Origin: Phallusia mammillata
Taxonomy: Eukaryota
Assembly: GCA_965637545.1 (NCBI GenBank)
Contig: OZ281499.1
Location: forward strand, 26,846,001-26,910,000
DNA: 64,000 bases
Direction of reading: 5' to 3'
Shown: positions 5,096 through 56,913 of the stretch, piece after piece
Numbering within the stretch: position 1 is the first letter of the stretch
Layout of the letters: every line of letters begins with the position of its first letter
The notes under the pieces: generated by a model
Seen by the model: only the letters and a program-made list of their open reading frames with translations
Database searches by the model: none
Told to the model about the DNA's origin: nothing
Made by a program: the position numbers and the translations under genes

Positions 5096-5960
5096 ATGAC
5101 AAAGTTAAGTTTGTTGCTTGTCGTTTGTTTGTTAGTTGCAATGTTGGTTGATCCAGGACACAGCAAGAAGAAAAACAGAAAGAAAGCCACGGGTATATCT
5201 CCTATATTGGGAAGCAGCTACGGAGGGTGAGATGGTTTGTAAACAAGGATTTTTAAACATTTTCGTGTTCGGGATTTATGGGACTTGTTGTAATTTCGTC
5301 TGAGCTATAAGTTATTGTGGTAAATCAAGAGTATTCTGTCATGTGATGCTACCGATTAGATTTCACCACAAAAATGTTTTAGTCCCGCACACATATTTGT
5401 AAGACGGACCGGGTTTGTGAAGACGACAATTTTAAATAAAACTGACTTGACTTTGCCAAACTTCGTAAATTTCGGGCTTATATGAATTCAAATTCGGGAA
5501 GGGTTTTGGTTTGGACTTTTTCGGGCCAGCCGTCTACTCCACAGTCTCAAACTGTTTGTACAAGTGTTGGAGATCTGTGATTGAAATATCTGACCCAAAC
5601 CGAAAATTAAAACGGTGTATTTCCGGTAGCGATGTGCAGAATGAAATTTACTTTTGACACCAACTTGTATTTTGTAGTGGTGATTCAGATCAACTGGAAA
5701 AAGAAGACGCTCGAGAAAAACGAGGTAAACGTCACTGAGTAAATCTGAACCAAAATACAAGAGAGTTCAGTTAGTTGCATATCGGTTAATATTACATTCT
5801 GGATAATCGCAACAAGGTTGGAAATTATATTCTTAGCATGTGGCAAAAAGTTATCTTCGTTTGAACCAAAAGTAAGTTGCATCAATCAAAACATCTAAGC
5901 ACAATAATTTTTATTTCATCGCGTTTTCCAGACATTCGAAGCCAAATCAAAAAGAACTAA
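5096..5960 (+). CDS. Secreted prepropeptide, subtype C (C1, A-type exon 1), 68 aa; exons 5096-5226, 5678-5724, 5932-5960
   Basis: MTKLSLLLVVCLLVAMLVDPGHS-KKKNRKKATGISPILGSSYGG-GDSDQLEKEDAREKR-DIRSQIKKN*. Phases 2/1; exons 2-3 homologous to 26022-26282 and 57785-58125. A TAC>TAA change shortens exon 3 relative to the paralogs. Confidence 0.65.
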
Positions 5961-6859: not shown

Positions 6860-7411
6860 ATGACAAAGTTAAGTTTGTTGCTTGCCGTTTGTTTGTTGGT
6901 TGCAATGTTGGTTGATCCGGGACACAGCATGAAGAAATCCCCTATATTGGTGAGCGTCAATGGAGGGTAAGATGGTTTGTAAACACAAATTACAAGAATT
7001 GAATTTGCTTGCAACTGTCAGGAAATGTACAACCATGTTATAGGTGATCCAAATATTTTGCTTAAAACTTTTCCGCAGGGTTTCTATTCCCTGGGATTTC
7101 GAAAACAACGAAGATCTTGAAATGTTCGAAGATCTTCTTAGAGGTAACAAGTGTTGCTTACAAGATCTCACTTGAGGCGTTTGCAGTTTGTAATTTTTCC
7201 CATATTAAGTAAATATATCCGCAATGCTGTGGTTTAAACAACAAACTATAAATCTTCCCAGTGATATTAAATTTCCTCTTAAATACTTTTGTCAGGAAAT
7301 CGAACCCATAACTCCACGATTACAAAACCGATGGCATAGAATTAAACAAATATTTTATTTCTTGCAGATTTCAAAGATGAACTGATTGAAGAAGACAGAA
7401 TGAAAGGATAA
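6860..7411 (+). CDS. Secreted prepropeptide, subtype A (A1), 71 aa; exons 6860-6966, 7079-7143, 7368-7411
   Basis: MTKLSLLLAVCLLVAMLVDPGHS-MKKSPILVSVNGG-VSIPWDFENNEDLEMFEDLLRDFKDELIEEDRMKG*. GG|GTAAG and AG|GTAAC donors, pyrimidine-rich acceptors. Confidence 0.8.
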
Positions 7412-12037: not shown

Positions 12038-12440
12038 GGGATTTGAATTTGAACATAGACGCTTCAAGGCTGATCCCAGTTATGAATTATAATGTTCATC
12101 TTAACTGATACTGGTCAATCTGGCGATCCCATACTACGAAGCTGACATGTGCAGCATACGAGGCAGGCAACTGTTCTTGTGATTTGACTTTCGGCGGATT
12201 CTGCACTGAGCCTGCGTAGCTCAGTTGGTAGAGCTCGAGTCCCGGATAGACTTTTGTCGTGGGTTCGAATCCCACCGCAGGCTAGATTTTTCTAGCCCAC
12301 ACCTTGCCATATGGTGCTGAATGCTTGGTGTCCGGCAGATTCGGTATAGCGCCTTCAATGGGTCTGGCGTACTGTGATTTATATACGAGTGTGCCGTGAT
12401 CGTTGGTCTGCATAGACGCTTCAGGGCTGATCCCAGTTAT
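12038..12440 (+). mobile_element. tRNA-derived SINE-like cassette in La1 intron 1
   Basis: Flanked by a 10-bp direct repeat gaatacgaag and absent from homologous introns (~17007, ~36035). Contains an A box (TAGCTCAGTTGG) and B box (GGTTCGAATCC) cloverleaf at 12210-12283 and a ~35-bp internal direct repeat near both ends. Confidence 0.65.
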
Positions 12441-25687: not shown

Positions 25688-26282
25688 ATGACAAAGATAA
25701 GTTTGTTGCTTGTCGTTTGTTTGTTAGTTGCAATGTTAGTTGATCCAGGACACAGCATGAAGAAGAAAGACACTGCCCCGCATCCAAACTCTGTATTGGG
25801 AAGCAACAACGGAGGGTGAGATGGTTTTGTAAACAAGGTTTTGTAAACATTTTAGTGTTCGGGATTTTCCGGGCCTGTCCTTTACTCTGCAGTCACAAAC
25901 TGTTTGTACGAGTGTTGGAGACCTGTGATTGAAATATCTGACCCAAACCGGAGGTTAAACGGTGTATTTCCGGCATTGTTGTTTTGTGCAACTACGTTTG
26001 ACACCAACTTGTATTTTGCAGTGGTGATTCAGATCAACTGAAAAAAGCAGTCGCTCAAGAAAAACGAGGTAAACGTCACTGAGTAATTTATTTTCTTAGA
26101 ATGTGGTTATAAGTTGGTCAAACGACCTGCTGAGTTTAAACCAAAAAAGATCACATAAAAATACCTCATTCATATATCTCATTCCATCAATCAAAACATC
26201 GAACATAATCAAATTTATTTCATCCCTTTCAGTCATTCGAAGCCAAATCGAAAGCAACTACGCAGTGCCACCAGGGAGTTGA
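25688..26282 (+). CDS. Secreted prepropeptide, subtype C (C2, A-type exon 1), 74 aa; exons 25688-25815, 26022-26068, 26233-26282
   Basis: MTKISLLLVVCLLVAMLVDPGHS-MKKKDTAPHPNSVLGSNNGG-GDSDQLKKAVAQEKR-VIRSQIESNYAVPPGS*; canonical splice sites, phases 2/1. Confidence 0.7.
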
Positions 26283-26411
26283 AGTCACCGTTGACTGACC
26301 AATCAGCTTCAAGGGCGCGCATTTTGAATTGTCGCCAAAATAAAATAAATAATCAAATCAGCTCAATGTGAGATTGTTGTTGAGTGAAATAATTCTGAAG
26401 AGGGTCTGACA

Positions 26412-28327: not shown

Positions 28328-28892
28328 ATGACAAAGTTAAGTTTGTTGCTTTTTGTTTGTTTGTTGGTTGGTTGCAATGTTGGTTGATCCAGGACACAGC
28401 ATGAAGAAATCCCCTATATTGGTGAGCATTAATGGAGGGTAAGATGGTTTGTAAACACAAAATACAAAACTTGAAATTTAATTGTCAGGAAATGTACAAC
28501 CAAGTTATATGTGATCCGAATATTTTGCCTAAAACTTTTCGTAGGGTTTCTGTTCCCTGGGATTTCGAAAACAACGAAGATCTTGAAATGTTTGAAGATC
28601 TTCTCAGAGGTAACAAGTGTTGACTACAATATATCGCTTGAGGAGTTTACAGTTTGTAATCTTCTCATATTAACTAAATACATCCGCAATATAAACCGCA
28701 ATGCTGCGGTTTAAACAACAAACCATAAATCTGCCCAGTGATATCACATTTTATCTTAAATACTTTTGTCAGGTCGGGAATCGAACCCACAACTCCACGA
28801 TTACAAAACCGATGGCATAAAATTAAACAAATGTTTTATTTCTTGCAGATTTCAAAGATGAACTGATTAAAAAAGACAGAATGAAAGGATAA
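28328..28892 (+). pseudogene. Subtype A copy A2, frameshifted
   Basis: A 4-nt duplication (gttg) in the signal-peptide codons gives an early TGA. Exons 2 (28545-28609) and 3 (28849-28892) are intact and near-identical to A1. Confidence 0.8.
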
Positions 28893-29832
28893 ACTGAAAA
28901 TACCGAAGTTGCCTTTATTCAGATGTGATCCGTAGTTGGGAAAGTTAATAAAATTATTTAAGTGCGGTTATTTATACGCTGTGCTACAATGTAAACAGAT
29001 TTAAACAATAATTGCTGAATTTAATTAAAGTCAACAAAACAAAACAAACGTCTTTGAAGTTTTTGCAAATGTGCATCACAGGTATAAAGAACATTTATGT
29101 TGAATGTAATCTTTTCATGTGAAAGCCGAATAGAGAGACTTAGACTGAAATGTGGGCCCTAAATATCAGCAGCAAACCTATGGTGCAACATATAGTGGAT
29201 TAAGCAACATAAGGAAAGTAGACACTTACCGAAAGTTTGCGGAAGACCAGGCGTTGAAAGTGCTGAAAGTTAGTCGTGTCAATTGTTGGTGGTTCTTCTC
29301 AAGTATCAAACAACATCAACAAAACTGTTTGCTAAACTCATTGTTAAAACGGGAAGTGCATACGGACGTTTGGTATGGATGGGCGATTTGAACGAGCTGC
29401 AAGCACTGTTTTGTATTGGAAGGCAGATCTGCGGTTAAGAGGGCGTTTCCTCTGCCTGGAAGTAGATTATGTTTATTAGTTCTTGACTTGTATGTAATTC
29501 CGTGATTAACATATGTTGGGTCGTTAATATCAACAACACTTTGTTTACAAAGTTAGTTGCTTCGCAAGAAATGGACGATGTGTTAGAATTATTATTGTTA
29601 GCTTCCAATAACGGGTTTCCCTTCAAAATTGTGCATTTAACTGTAACAAAAGTAAATTAACCCGATTTCAAATAGCATAAGTAAAACAACAACAGCTGTA
29701 CCACAGTTATATCACGATGCTCTTGAGCCCGCTTAAATTAGGAAAGTGTATTTTATCGTTTTGTGTGTTTGCAGCGAGTTAGACGCACGGCGTAATGTTT
29801 CTTATGTTTACAGTTGATTCCAAGTAGGAGAG

Positions 29833-30731
29833 ATGACGAAGTTAAGTTTGTTGCTTGTGGTTTGTTTGTTTGTTGCAATGTTAGTTGATCCAGGACACAG
29901 CAAGAAGAAGAAACGAAAGAAAACCACAATCCCGGTTATACGCCCTGTACAAGGAAGCATCAATGGAGGGTAAGATGTTTTAAACAGTGATTTCAAGTTT
30001 GAAATTTTTTGGCAACTGTAAGGAGTTGGACATATACAACCGAGTTTCAAACGATCTAAATCAGGCGCGATGAAATCCTGGCATCGCATGCGGCCCATGA
30101 ACACTTTCAGCTTACCGTCAGGCAAATACAATGTGTGTTTATTTAGGAGGTAACAAGTGCTTTATGACGGTATAAACGCGTTTACTTTAGGTAATATTTG
30201 GGTTTCAAAACATGGTGTCGATTAGAACAGCAAAGTTAGTTCTTCAATACAAATGAGGTTTACTATTTGCGGCAAGAATTTGCCAAACGATAATGTGGCT
30301 CTCCATCTTCTCAGTCTTGGAACATTTTGAGTTGGATAATTTACACGAAACTTTTTCGCTGGGTTTCTATTGCCTGGGATTTGGAAAACAACAACGATGG
30401 GAATGAAGATCTTGAAATGTTCGAAGATCTTCTCAGAGGTAACAAGTGTTGCTTACAAGATCTCACTTGAGGCGTTTGCAGTTTGTAATTTTTCCCATAT
30501 TAAGTAAGTATATCCGCAATATAAAGCCGCAATGCTGTGTTTTAAACAACAAACCATAAATCTTCCCAGTGATATCAGATTTCTTCTTAAATTCCTTTGT
30601 CAGGTTGGGAATCGAACCCACAACTCCACGAGAACAAAACCGATGAAATAAAATTAAACAAATACTTGATTTTTCTTGCAGATTTCGAAGATGAACTGAT
30701 TGAAGAAGACAGAATGAAAAGGATAAACTAA
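29833..30731 (+). CDS. Subtype A copy A3 (exon 1 KKKKRKKTTIPVIRPVQGSINGG); intron-1 acceptor mutated AG>TG, possibly non-functional
   Basis: Exons 29833-29969, 30362-30438, 30682-30731 are open and in phase, but the acceptor reads tttttcgctg instead of cgcag. Confidence 0.55.
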
Positions 30732-50254: not shown

Positions 50255-51765
50255 TTAGTTTATCCTTTTCATTCTGTCTTCTTCAATCATTTCATCTTCG
50301 AATTCTGCAAGAAAAATAAAATATTTCCTTAATTTTATGGCCTCGGTTTTGTAATCGTGGAGTTGTGGGTTCGATTTCCGACCTGACAAAGGTGTTTATA
50401 AGAGAAATGTGATATCACTGGGAACATTTATGATTTGTTGTTTAAACCACACCATTGCGGCTTTATATTGCGGATATATTTACTTAATATGAGAAAAATT
50501 ACAAACTGCTAACGCCTCAAGTGAGATCCAACACTTATTACCTCTGAGAAGATCTTCAAACATTTCAAGATCTTCGTTGTTGTCGTAATCCCATGATTTT
50601 GTAGGGAATGATTTTGTAGGGGATGATTTTTTAGGGGATGATTTTGTAGGGGATGATTTTTTAGGGGATAATTTTGTAGGGGATAATTTTGTAGGGAATG
50701 ATTTTTTAGGGGATGATTTTTTAGGGGATGATTTTGTAGGGGATGATTTTGTAGGAGATGATTTTGTAGGGAATGATTTTGTAGGAGATGATTTTTTAGG
50801 GGATAATTTTGTAGGGGATAATTTTTTAGGGGATGATTTTGTAGGGAATGGTTTTGTAGGGAATGATTTTTTAGAGAATGATTTTGTAGGGAATGATTTT
50901 TTAGGGGATGGTTTTGTAGGGAATGATTTTTTAGGGGATGATTTTTTAGGGGATGATTTTTTAGGGGATGATTTTGTAGGGGATGATTTTTTAGGGGATG
51001 GTTTTGTAGGGAATGATTTTTTAGGGAATGATTTTTTAGGGGATGATTTTTAGGGGATGATTTTGTAGGGAATGATTTTTTAGGGGATGATTTTTTAGGG
51101 GATGATTTTGTAGGGGATGATTTTTTAGGGGATAATTTTGTAGGGAATGGTTTTGTAGGGAATGATTTTTTAGGGAATGATTTTGTAGGAGATGATTTTT
51201 TAGGGAATGATTTTTTAGGAGATGATTTTTTACGGGATGATTTTGTAGGGGATGATTTTTTAGAGGATGGTTTTGTAGGGAATGATTTTTTAGGGGATGA
51301 TTTTTTAGGGGATGATTTTGTAGGGAATGGTTTTGTAGGGAATGATTTTTTAGGGAATGATTTTGTAGGAGATGGTTTTTTAGGGGATGATTTTTTAGGG
51401 GATAATTTTGTAGGGGATGATTTTTTAGGGAATGGTTTTGTAGGGAATGATTTTGTAGGGGATGATTTTATAGGGGATGACTTTAAAGGGAATGATTTTA
51501 TAGGGAATGATTTTATAGGGGATAATTTTATAGGGGATGATTTTGTAGGGAATGATTTTTTAGGGAATGATTTTTTAGGGGATGATTTTGTAGGGGATGA
51601 TTTTATAGGGAATGATTTGATAGGGAATGATTTTATAGGGAATGATTTTATAGGGGATAATTTCGGGATTGTGGTTTTCTTTATGTTCTTCTTCATGCTG
51701 TGTCCTGGTTCAACCACCATTGCAACCAACAAACAAACGACGAGCAACAAACTTAACTTTGTCAT
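50255..51765 (-). CDS. Repeat-expanded subtype A gene A5: exons 1+2 fused (51765-50542), exon 3 at 50304-50255, one 1-nt frameshift inside the repeat
   Basis: Signal peptide plus KKNIKKTTIP, then 71 pentapeptide units running directly into WDYDNNEDLEMFEDLLR. One unit is 14 nt (T5 instead of T6 at ~51047-51051). With that base restored the product is 424 aa. Confidence 0.7.
50594..51663 (-). repeat. Coding 15-nt minisatellite, 71 units (K-S-[SF]-P-[KTI])
   Basis: Period-15 array gg(g/a)atgatttt(t/g)tagg on the plus strand; the 1064 nt of full units equal 71x15-1. Confidence 0.95.
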
Positions 51766-55144: not shown

Positions 55145-56913
55145 TTAGTTTATCCTTTTCATTATGTCTTCTTTAATCAGTTCATCTTCGAATTCTGCAA
55201 GAACATAAAATATTTGTTTAATTTTATTTCATCGGTTTTGTTCTCGTGGAGTTGTGGGTTCGATTCCCGACCTGACAAAGGAATTTAAGAAGAAATGTGA
55301 TATCACTGGGACGATTTATGGTTCGTTGTTTAAACCACAGCATTGCGGCTTTATATTGCGGATATATTTAATTATTATGAGAAAAATTACAAACTGCAAA
55401 CGCCTCAAGTGAGATCTTGTAACCAACACTTGTTACCTCTGAGAAGATCTTCAAACATTTCAAGATCTTCGTTGTTTTCGAAATCCCACAGAATAGGAAC
55501 CCTACGAAAAGTTTTATGCAAAATATTGAGATCATTTATAACTTGGTTTTGCATTTTCTAACAACTAATTTCAAGTTTTGTCATTTGTGTTTACAAAACA
55601 TCTTACCATTCGTTGATGGTCATCGATATAGGGATTAATTTTATAGGGGATTTCTTTATAGGGGATAATTTTATAAGGGATGATTTGATAGGGAATGATT
55701 TTGTAGGGGATGATTTTATAGGGGATGATTTCATAGGGAATGATTTTACAGGGGATGATTTTATAGGGAATGATTTTGTAGGGAATGATTTTGTAGGGGA
55801 TTTCTTTATAGGGGATGATTTTATAGGGAATGATTTTATAGGGAATGATTTTGTAGGGAATGATTTTATAGGGAATGATTTTGTAGGGAATGATTTTGTA
55901 GGGAATGATTTTATGGGGGATTTCTTTATAGGGGATGATTTTATAGGGAATGATTTTATAGGGAATGATTTTATAGGGGATGATTTTATAGGGAATGATT
56001 TTATAGGGAATGATTTTATAGGGGATGATTTTATAGGGGATGATTTTATAGGGAATGATTTTATAGGGAATGATTTTATAGGGGATGATTTTATAGGGAA
56101 TGATTTTATAGGGAATGATTTTATAGGGGATGATTTTATAGGGAATGATTTTATAGGGAATGATTTTATAGGGAATGATTTTATAGGGAATGATTTTGTA
56201 GGGAATGATTTTGTAGGGGATTTCTTTATAGGGGATGATTTTATAGGGAATGATTTTATAGGGAATGATTTTATAGGGGATGATTTTATAGGGAATGATT
56301 TTATAGGGAATGATTTTATAGGGAATGATTTTACAGGGGATGATTTTATAGGGAATGATTTTGTAGGGAATGATTTTGTAGGGGATTTCTTTATAGGGGA
56401 TGATTTTATAGGGAATGATTTTATAGGGAATGATTTTGTAGGGAATGATTTTATAGGGAATGATTTTGTAGGGAATGATTTTGTAGGGAATGATTTTATG
56501 GGGGATTTCTTTATAGGGGATGATTTTATAGGGAATGATTTTATAGGGAATGATTTTATAGGGGATGATTTTATAGGGAATGATTTTATAGGGAATGATT
56601 TTATAGGGGATGATTTTATAGGGGATGATTTTATAGGGAATGATTTTATAGGGAATGATTTTATAGGGGATGATTTTATAGGGAATGATTTTATAGGGAA
56701 TGATTTTATAGGGGATGATTTTATAGGGAATGATTTTATAGGGAATGATTTTATAGGGAATGATTTTATAGGGAATGATTTTATAGGGGATGATTTTATA
56801 GGGGATAATTTCGGGATTGTGGTTTTCTTTATGTTCTTCTTCTTGCTGTTTCCTGGTTCAACCACCATTGCAACCAACAAACAAACGACAAGCAACAAAC
56901 TCAACTTTGTCAT
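55145..56913 (-). CDS. Repeat-expanded subtype A gene A6, intact, 473 aa; exons 56913-55607, 55501-55437, 55194-55145
   Basis: Signal peptide, 79 K-S-[FS]-P-[IT] units, SMTINE, phase-2 donor TG|GTAAG, then WVPILWDFENNEDLEMFEDLLR-EFEDELIKEDIMKRIN*. Confidence 0.85.
55627..56811 (-). repeat. Coding 15-nt minisatellite, 79 units, with a 585-bp higher-order duplication
   Basis: Period-15 array; rare variant units (ttaca, ttatg) recur exactly 585 bp apart (55746/56331 and 55911/56496). Confidence 0.95.

What the first reader, a model, noticed from the sequence alone, without database searches (positions are those of the whole stretch)
50255..51765. Sister repeat gene A5 lost intron 1 in frame and carries a mid-array frameshift giving a diblock protein
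Seen: the array runs directly ...CCT ACA AAA TCA TGG GAT TAC GAC AAC AAC GAA (PTKS-WDYDNNE). The end of exon 1, all of intron 1 and four codons of exon 2 are deleted while the ancestral frame is kept. One unit lacks a T (~51047-51051). As assembled, about 41 K-S-[SF]-P-[KT] units are followed by about 30 N-H-[PS]-L-[QK] units with no stop. Either this is a homopolymer assembly error (true product 424 aa, SPKK-rich) or a real frameshift that created a Lys-rich/His-rich diblock protein. Its units have diverged from A6 (SPK/FPT versus FPI).
Basis: partly seen in the sequence, partly recalled or inferred. Interest (0 to 1): 0.75.

Follow-up and report, generated by a model that had tools for sequence, protein, structure and literature searches.

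The report
Frameshifted repeat gene missing one intron
One copy of a sea-squirt gene for a secreted, lysine-rich repeat protein has lost an intron through a small deletion and carries a one-letter loss that garbles its second half; the loss is probably real but recent, and nothing shows the garbled protein is used.

Summary
A5 lies on the minus strand at 51765-50255. It has a signal peptide, then 71 tandem 15-nt units, fused straight onto the family's acidic tail (…PTKS|WDYDNNEDLEMFEDLLR). All 12 other family copies with a recognisable exon 2 keep intron sequence at that point. About 138 nt or more were deleted, in frame. One of the array's 31 A runs of five or more has five A's (T5, 51047-51051); the other 30 have six. 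So units 1-41 read K-S-x-P-x and units 42-71 read N-H-x-L-x. The acidic tail goes out of frame and the stop falls in the last exon. An assembly error is unlikely: histone repeats in this assembly keep exact periods over about 171 kb with no indel. The open shifted frame is compositional, because every K/T-type unit lacks a stop in that frame. Units on either side of the shift are indistinguishable, and the old frame downstream is still intact. Best reading: a young, real frameshift allele in a fast-turnover, orphan, antimicrobial-peptide-like precursor family. It is not a selected diblock design. No expression data could be reached. Interest is modest.

The parts
51697..51765 (-). Start codon and predicted signal peptide MTKLSLLLVVCLLVAMVVEPGHS
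   Evidence: ORF listing. The signal exon is shared at 75-94% with at least 8 paralogs in the window. It is modelled as helix 5-17 in the single-sequence AlphaFold model. The signal-peptide call rests on inspection only.
51664..51696 (-). Pre-array cationic linker MKKNIKKTTIP
   Evidence: It differs from A6 by one residue in this segment (M24K); H22N lies in the signal peptide.
51049..51663 (-). Repeat units 1-41 (15 nt each), read K-[SLP]-[SF]-P-[IKT]. Units 1-4 and 9-13 are I/L-type, like A6.
   Evidence: Unit table. TRF array.
51047..51051 (-). The frameshift: an A5 run (T5 on the + strand) where the other 30 K-K junctions have A6
   Evidence: Homopolymer census (A runs: 30 of length 6, 1 of length 5). 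Sequence.
50600..51048 (-). Repeat units 42-71. As assembled they read N-[HY]-[PSL]-L-[KQ]. One base further on they read K-S-[SF]-P-[KT], with no stop or further indel.
   Evidence: Unit-type composition is the same as in units 14-41.
50594..50599 (-). Truncated last unit AAA TCA. The deletion junction lies between 50594 and 50593.
50542..50593 (-). Homolog of exon 2 without its first 13 nt: WDYDNNEDLEMFEDLLR plus the first base of a split codon. It is in frame with units 42-71 in the ancestral register and out of frame with the ATG as assembled.
   Evidence: tblastn, alignment A1. 50 of 52 nt are identical to A6.
50305..50541 (-). Intron 2 (GTAATAAG ... TTCTTGCAG), retained. It contains a conserved tRNA-T-arm-like box at 50357-50383.
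   Evidence: Alignment A1. 90.8% identity to A6 intron 2. Splice sites were read.
50255..50304 (-). Last exon. In the ancestral frame it reads (E)FEDEMIEEDRMKRIN*. In the as-assembled frame it reads NSKMK*.
   Evidence: The stop TAA is at 50257-50255.
55145..56913 (-). Sister gene A6, the reference for the ancestral structure. Exon 1 is 56913-55607 (79 units), intron 1 is 55606-55502, exon 2 is 55501-55437, and exon 3 ends at 55145.

Best explanation
A5 is a real paralog in a tandem cluster of small secreted-peptide precursor genes. The family layout is a signal peptide, a short cationic core, and a conserved acidic C-terminal piece, spread over three exons. In the common ancestor of A5 and A6, one 15-nt piece of the cationic core (K-K/S-S-P-I) was amplified into a long coding minisatellite.

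Two lesions then hit A5.

(i) A genomic deletion of at least 138 nt removed the last codons of exon 1, all of intron 1 and the first four codons of exon 2. It fused the array in frame to the acidic piece. This is an imprecise intron loss by deletion, not a reverse-transcriptase-mediated one.

(ii) One A was lost from one of 31 A6 runs, in unit 42. In the sequenced haplotype the last 30 units are therefore read one base off as N-H-x-L-x. The acidic piece is replaced by 24 unrelated residues, and the stop falls in the last exon.

I take lesion (ii) to be a true feature of this haplotype but evolutionarily very young. It is most likely a segregating or recently fixed degenerative or neutral allele in a birth-and-death family, not a selected two-block design.

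Shown: both lesions, their uniqueness in the family, the low indel noise of the assembly, and the compositional openness of the shifted frame. Inferred: the order and age of the events, secretion, and lack of function of the new block.
For: - Structure and junction.
- Family layout and sister status: at least 10 paralogs in the window share the three-exon layout. A5 and A6 alone share the array, VVEPG in the signal peptide, and an E-initial exon 3. The 15-nt array occurs nowhere else in the 240-Mb assembly: all 100 listed of 135 pattern matches lie in A5 or A6.
- The lesion is real rather than noise: histone H3 matches recur at exactly 4993 nt (23 intervals) and 6198 nt (9 intervals). Six fetched units differ by 0-3 substitutions and no indel, with 26 homopolymers of 5 nt or more each. 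Within the array, 30 of 31 identical contexts are called A6.
- The lesion is young and unselected. Unit types do not differ across the shift. The ancestral frame downstream (449 nt of array, the 6-nt truncated unit and 102 nt of tail) has no stop or further indel, and both intron-2 splice sites and the stop are intact. By contrast, A5-A6 non-coding DNA shows about one indel per 80-180 nt.
- Real lesions are common in this family. There is a TTGG duplication in the signal exon of the copy at 28328. Two paralogs share a shortened A run. Two copies have lost the acceptor AG.
Against: - No reads, second haplotype, transcript or protein record could be reached. So the T5 call itself is not independently verified.
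- The histone control measures stochastic noise. An error mode specific to this array cannot be excluded.
I did not check that.
- Non-array coding differences between A5 and A6 are 2 synonymous and 7 non-synonymous. There is thus no sign that either gene was under purifying selection even before the shift.
- The roughly 14 distinct substitution events in the array would predict about one indel under neutrality. The 'kept clean until recently' argument is therefore weak.
Confidence: 0.6

Rival explanations
1. Consensus or assembly error. The true sequence has A6 at 51047-51051, and A5 encodes an uninterrupted 424-aa signal / 71-unit Lys-Ser-Pro array / acidic-tail protein.
For: The lesion is a one-base length change in a homopolymer inside a 1-kb array of near-identical units, which is a classic site for consensus errors. 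Everything downstream is intact in the ancestral frame.
Against: There is no indel noise in about 171 kb of histone tandem repeats carrying more than 900 homopolymers of 5 nt or more. The other 30 identical contexts in the array are called A6, and A6's 30 consecutive identical units are clean. Real frame-breaking lesions are common in this family.
Confidence: 0.15
2. A5 was already a dead gene. The array is a runaway minisatellite in a pseudogene. The intron-removing deletion kept the frame by chance (1 in 3), and the frameshift is just the next hit.
For: dN/dS is about 1 in the non-array coding parts (2 synonymous, 7 non-synonymous). The number of indels in the array is about what neutrality predicts from its substitution events. 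The cluster contains many wrecks. No transcript or protein of the family is on record.
Against: The start codon, signal peptide, both remaining splice sites and the stop are intact. The 5' flank is 93.6% identical to A6 over 535 nt. The K frame has no stop across 71 units. None of these is decisive.
Confidence: 0.15
3. A selected two-block protein. The frameshift is fixed and maintained because a secreted polymer with a polycationic SPKK-like half and a His/Asn/Leu-rich half (pH- or metal-responsive) is useful.
For: The shifted frame stays open to the last exon. The transcript should therefore escape nonsense-mediated decay (established rule; stop position and the splice sites). The NH block is 17% His.
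Against: The openness is purely compositional. There is no substitution pattern specific to the new frame. The conserved acidic piece is lost yet still undecayed in the old frame. No second gene in the genome uses this frame. No structure is predicted for either block (mean pLDDT 46.7).
Confidence: 0.07

Closest known systems
Ascidian cationic antimicrobial-peptide precursors (Ciona Ci-MAM-type LCAMP precursors; PMC7387483)
   Same: The order of parts in the family is the same: a conserved signal peptide, a short cationic core, then an anionic C-terminal proregion. Like them, the genes sit in clusters of divergent paralogs with a conserved signal.
   Different: No sequence relative was found in the word searches. 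In A5 and A6 the 10-25-residue core has become a 355-395-residue proline-rich repeat that cannot form the amphipathic helix of LCAMPs. Its charge (at least +59 in the first 41 units alone) far exceeds what the acidic piece (net -10) could neutralise. No activity has been shown.
Frameshifts inside coding tandem repeats that create a new repeat protein, e.g. MUC1 VNTR frameshift (MUC1-fs) in ADTKD (PMC5843638)
   Same: A one-base length change in a homopolymer inside one unit of a coding VNTR. All downstream units are then read in another frame that happens to be open, giving a protein with two different repeat blocks and a new C-terminus. Such changes are hard to verify by short reads.
   Different: Here it is a deletion in an A run of a 15-nt unit in an orphan invertebrate gene. 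No phenotype, expression or toxicity is known. It may be a mere polymorphism.
Imprecise intron loss by genomic deletion / end joining (PMC3296678; PMC3020277)
   Same: The intron is removed together with flanking exon bases by a single deletion. The 3' intron is retained, and there is no sign of a cDNA intermediate.
   Different: At most 1 nt of microhomology is present at the junction. One breakpoint lies in a coding minisatellite, so the exact size of the deletion cannot be reconstructed.
Proline-rich pentapeptide-repeat wall or adhesive proteins (plant extensin/PRP-like; Pfam Extensin_1)
   Same: Secreted, Lys/Pro/Ser-rich, five-residue period, predicted to be unstructured. A6 scores 95.6 bits against Extensin_1. 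The nearest Atlas cluster to A5 is 'vegetative cell wall protein gp1-like' at 0.78.
   Different: Both scores are below threshold and reflect composition only. A5 itself does not match Extensin_1.

Membership tests
Local three-exon precursor family of this cluster | Conserved signal-peptide exon (MTKLSLLLVVCLLVAM...) | tested here: met
   tblastn: 75-94% identity to at least 8 copies in the window.
Local three-exon precursor family of this cluster | Acidic exon 2 (WDFENNEDLEMFEDLLR), conserved intron 2, and exon 3 ([DE]FEDELIEEDRMKRIN*) | tested here: met
   In A5 these are present and intact, but only in the ancestral frame, not in the frame set by the ATG as assembled.
Local three-exon precursor family of this cluster | Intron 1 between the cationic core (...NGG|gtaaga) and exon 2 | tested here: not met
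   It is absent in A5 only. All 12 other copies with a recognisable exon 2 have intron sequence there.
Ascidian AMP-type precursor (Ci-MAM-like architecture) | Signal peptide, then cationic region, then anionic proregion | tested here: met
   Met for the family and for A5 in the ancestral frame. Not met for the as-assembled reading, which lacks the anionic piece. The architecture definition comes from PMC7387483.
Ascidian AMP-type precursor (Ci-MAM-like architecture) | Sequence homology to a described AMP family | tested here: inconclusive
   Word searches with the whole ORF, the N-terminal piece and the C-terminal piece found nothing. Pfam gave only sub-threshold compositional hits. The pieces are too short and too biased for a profile search.
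Ascidian AMP-type precursor (Ci-MAM-like architecture) | Antimicrobial activity of the released cationic peptide | not testable with these tools
   Needs synthesis or expression and an assay.
Frameshifted coding VNTR (MUC1-fs type) | One-base indel in a homopolymer within one unit of an in-frame coding tandem repeat | tested here: met
Frameshifted coding VNTR (MUC1-fs type) | The alternative frame is open through the remaining units, giving a second repeat block | tested here: met
   There are 30 units, no stop, and the new stop lies in the last exon.
Frameshifted coding VNTR (MUC1-fs type) | The frameshift product is made | not testable with these tools
   No transcript or protein record was found.
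Imprecise intron loss by genomic deletion | Intron present at the homologous site in relatives, absent here, with flanking exon bases co-deleted and the frame kept | tested here: met
   Eleven ancestral codons, the 105-nt intron and part of a unit are missing. The junction reads AAA TCA|TGG GAT.
Imprecise intron loss by genomic deletion | Microhomology at the junction | tested here: not met
   At most one shared T when compared with A6. A 7-nt ATTCCCT shared by units and the exon-2 start of the copy at 6860 does not give the observed junction.
SPKK / histone H1-like DNA-binding proteins (Pfam HC2) | Score over the Pfam cut-off; nuclear protein | tested here: not met
   22 bits against a cut-off of 40. 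An N-terminal signal peptide argues for secretion.

The most novel reading that the evidence does not exclude
The T5 allele is real, fixed or common, transcribed, spared by nonsense-mediated decay because its stop lies in the last exon, and translated. The animal would then secrete a 413-residue two-block polymer: an SPKK-like polycation followed by a His/Asn/Leu-rich block, without the family's acidic propiece. That would be a new repeat protein caught at birth by frameshift inside a coding minisatellite. Its histidine-rich half would add pH- or metal-dependent behaviour in an animal lineage known for metal accumulation (the last point is from my own knowledge and was not tested).
Probability: 0.07. 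Interest if true: 0.6.

Novelty: new member of a known kind. Interest (0 to 1): 0.3.

Why it matters
If the allele is real, A5 is a compact natural example of two textbook processes in one young gene. One is intron removal by a sloppy genomic deletion that happens to keep the frame. The other is a one-base slip inside a coding minisatellite that rewrites 150 residues at once without creating an early stop. Such events are one proposed route to new low-complexity proteins, and in human MUC1 a route to disease. For annotation, the practical point is this: the gene should not be silently repaired, and the open shifted frame should not be read as evidence of function. Beyond that, the gene belongs to an unannotated, lineage-restricted family with no expression data, so the wider significance is limited for now.

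Tried and rejected
(1) Independent sequence evidence for T5 versus T6.
- The assembly has only one copy of A5's 3' part at 100%; the next best is A6 at 90%. So there is no haplotig to compare.
- The 15-nt array occurs only in A5 and A6.
- Exact-product look-ups for the A5 and A6 ORFs found nothing.

(2) Relatives and transcripts.
- All three word searches found nothing: the whole 418-aa ORF, the ancestral-frame C-terminal piece 50543-50689, and the N-terminal 65 aa.
- The non-repetitive pieces are only 16-46 aa and the rest is low complexity, so a blank would say nothing.
- Spliced products (413 and 424 aa) were only counted. They were never joined or sent to a tool. Exons were searched apart, by reference.

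(3) Family scans. Pfam gave only sub-threshold compositional hits: HC2 at 22 bits against a cut-off of 40, Pentapeptide_4 at 15 against 38, and for A6 Extensin_1 at 95.6 against 105. The Atlas feature search gave one weak look-alike at 0.78.

(4) Structure. The single-sequence AlphaFold model had mean pLDDT 46.7. Only the signal helix and the shifted-frame C-terminal helix were modelled, so no fold search was warranted.

(5) Selection tests.
- Stops in the K frame: about 1.1 expected from roughly 14 substitution events, 0 seen. This has no power.
- Indels: about 1 expected, 1 seen.
- Unit-type contingency tests across the shift: p = 0.55-0.84.

(6) Rescue by cryptic splicing. Unit 29 has the only GT in the array (CCC|GTAAAA). 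A splice from there to the first downstream AG (…AACGAAG|AT, in exon 2) would land in the acidic frame. But that AG has no pyrimidine tract, and the in-frame outcome is a 1-in-3 coincidence. Rejected as unsupported.

(7) Slippage. Programmed or transcriptional slippage on an A5/A6 run was rejected as too short a run (established knowledge; not tested).

(8) Reading on the opposite strand. A6's + strand is open by composition. Only the minus strand has the start codon, signal peptide, splice sites and family homology.

(9) RNA families. Rfam and ARAGORN found nothing in the gene.

(10) Unit 42. For classifying its type I treated the 14-nt unit by its remaining bases.

Full report
**What is there**

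The stretch 50255-51765 holds one gene on the minus strand. From the ATG at 51765 it encodes:
- a typical signal peptide, MTKLSLLLVVCLLVAMVVEPGHS;
- a short basic linker, MKKNIKKTTIP;
- a tandem array of 71 units of 15 nt, at 51663-50600 (TRF: period 15, 71.5 copies, 88% matches; unit table).

After a truncated unit (AAA TCA) the sequence runs straight into TGG GAT TAC GAC AAC AAC GAA GAT CTT GAA ATG TTT GAA GAT CTT CTC AGA G. A GTAATAAG donor follows, then a 237-nt intron (50541-50305), then a last exon (50304-50255) ending in TAA.

**The gene family**

A tblastn map of the window and the paralog sequences show at least ten relatives on both strands, all with one layout:
- exon 1: signal peptide plus a short cationic core ending …NGG|gtaaga;
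- intron 1;
- exon 2: V[SP]I[PA]WDFENNEDLEMFEDLLR;
- intron 2, which is strikingly conserved;
- exon 3: [DE]FEDELIEEDRMKRIN*.

More copies lie in three other places of the 240-Mb assembly.

Earlier notes of this scan call the genome a sea squirt, one of them Phallusia mammillata. They describe a similar cluster elsewhere as antimicrobial-peptide-like, and they describe the sister gene A6 as a peptide gene swollen by a 15-base repeat. I did not verify the species.

The order signal / cationic region / anionic proregion is that of Ciona LCAMP precursors (PMC7387483). I found no sequence relative of the family anywhere.

**A5 and A6 are sisters**

- Only these two genes carry the array. All 100 listed of the 135 matches to a two-unit pattern in the whole assembly lie in A5 or A6; 35 further matches were not listed.
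- They share VVEPG in the signal peptide and an E-initial exon 3.
- Their 5' flanks are 93.6% identical over 535 nt and intron 2 is 90.8% identical.
- The seed of the unit is visible in an unexpanded paralog: …HSMKKSPILVSVNGG at 6860.
- A5's first 13 units are still mostly the I-type that dominates A6. Its interior units end in K or T, one base away from I.
- A6 contains a 39-unit internal duplication with 30 identical consecutive units. A5 has no higher-order repeat; its longest identical run is 4 units. A5's array therefore looks the older and more scrambled of the two.

**Intron loss**

In the alignment of A5 with A6 and three short paralogs (A1), homology begins at TGGGAT.

All 12 other copies with a recognisable exon 2 have intron sequence just upstream of TGGGAT. 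Ten of them have an AG acceptor, and all have GTTTCTATTSCS. A5 alone has array units there.

Relative to A6, three pieces are missing:
- 20 nt of exon 1 (SMTINEW);
- the 105-nt intron 1 (55606-55502);
- 13 nt of exon 2 (VPIL).

Part of a repeat unit is missing as well. The reading frame of the adjoining units continues into WDYDNNE….

Exon bases were removed on both sides and the downstream intron is retained. This is therefore an imprecise loss by genomic deletion, a known mechanism (PMC3296678), and not a cDNA-mediated loss. I see at most one base of microhomology at the junction. Keeping the frame is a 1-in-3 event, so by itself it proves nothing about selection.

**The frameshift**

- The array contains 30 A6 runs, all in the context CCT AAA AAA TCA, and one A5 run at 51051-51047.
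- From the ATG, units 1-41 read K-S-x-P-x and units 42-71 read N-H-x-L-x.
- The exon-2 homolog then reads GITTTTKILKCLKIFSE. After splicing, the last exon reads NSKMK*.
- By counting, the product is 413 aa as assembled. With a sixth A it would be 424 aa, ending in the acidic piece (33 residues, 14 acidic and 4 basic).
- I only counted these spliced products.

**Error or real?**

I could not reach reads or a second haplotype. I used the assembly itself as a control.

- Histone H3 matches recur at exactly 4993 nt in 23 successive intervals and at exactly 6198 nt in 9 intervals, on several contigs. That is about 171 kb with no net length change.
- Six fetched 4993-nt units differ by 0-3 substitutions and no indel. 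Each holds 26 homopolymers of 5 nt or more, up to 12 nt.

A noisy consensus would have scattered one-base length differences over these copies. A systematic miscall would have hit all 31 identical contexts in A5. Real frame-breaking lesions are also frequent in this family:
- a TTGG duplication in a signal exon at 28364;
- a shortened A run shared by two paralogs, at 7397 and 28878;
- two copies without an acceptor AG.

I therefore put the probability that T5 is a true feature of the sequenced haplotype at about 0.85.

**Is the two-block protein a design?**

Nothing says so.

- The +1 frame has no stop in any K- or T-type unit. It has TAA only in the I-type units and the single L-type unit (unit 12), all upstream of the shift. 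Any one-base deletion after unit 13 would read through to the end of the array.
- Unit types upstream (units 14-41) and downstream (units 42-71) are statistically indistinguishable (p = 0.55-0.84).
- The ancestral frame downstream has no stop or second indel. Both splice sites of intron 2 and the stop codon are intact. By contrast, A5-A6 non-coding DNA has about one indel per 80-180 nt.
- Both blocks are predicted to be unstructured (mean pLDDT 46.7).

So the lesion is young.

I also cannot show that A5 was under constraint before the shift:
- the non-array coding differences from A6 are 2 synonymous and 7 non-synonymous;
- the few independent substitution events in the array predict about one indel and about one stop under neutrality.

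**Verdict**

The intron loss is real and of a known kind. The frameshift is probably real. It is best read as a recent degenerative or neutral allele in a fast-turnover orphan family.

The closest analogue in kind is a frameshift inside a coding VNTR, such as MUC1-fs (PMC5843638). Because the new stop lies in the last exon, a two-block product would be expected if the gene is expressed. That keeps a small chance (about 0.07) for a genuinely new protein. Reads, population genotypes and cDNA would settle it.

Noticed in passing
window 55627-56811 (A6 array): The A6 array contains a 39-unit (585-nt) internal duplication. Units 3-32 and 42-71 are identical over 30 consecutive units, so about half of the array is a very recent copy. 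A5 has no such higher-order repeat.
   Followed up: partly
window 28328-28900 (+), at 28364: A short paralog has a 4-nt tandem duplication (TTGG) inside its signal-peptide exon. This shifts the frame (MTKLSLLLFVCLLVGCNVG*). It looks like a real pseudogenising lesion, not a homopolymer change.
   Followed up: no
window 7397 and 28878 (+): Two short paralogs share a one-A-shorter run in exon 3 (…AGAATGAAAGGATAA). This ends the protein early at RMKG*. Being shared, the change is inherited, not an assembly error.
   Followed up: no
window 30330-30375 (+) and L008 near 1828 (-): Two family copies have no AG at the intron-1 acceptor (…tttcgctg|ggtttct and …ttcgcatg|gtttct). They are likely further wrecks or use another acceptor.
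   Followed up: no
window 50357-50383 (A5 intron 2), and the same place in every paralog: Intron 2 is as conserved among paralogs as the exons are. It carries a tRNA T-arm/B-box-like motif (GTGGAGTTGTGGGTTCGATTTCCGACC on the + strand), possibly a SINE or tRNA-derived remnant or a regulatory element. ARAGORN and Rfam do not call it.
   Followed up: partly
window about 51233 (unit 29, minus strand): A CCT to CGT change gives KSSRK and creates the only GT in the array (CCC|GTAAAA, donor-like). A splice from it to the first downstream AG would be in frame with the acidic tail, but that AG has no pyrimidine tract. I judged it a coincidence.
   Followed up: partly
G000:C6:14305565-14427667 and contigs C21, C38, C57, C93, C257, C261: Large histone tandem arrays with exact periods of 4993 and 6198 nt. 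Units differ by 0-3 substitutions. Several small contigs are made only of these units.
   Followed up: partly
window 5096-5700 and 25688-26300 (+): Two copies share the family's signal exon but end exon 1 with …YGG|gtgaga or …NGG|gtgaga. They continue into a different second exon (…GDSDQLKKAVAQEKR). This is a sub-family with another tail.
   Followed up: no
window 12209-12284 (+): A tRNA-Ser(GGA) gene, called by both ARAGORN and Rfam.
   Followed up: no
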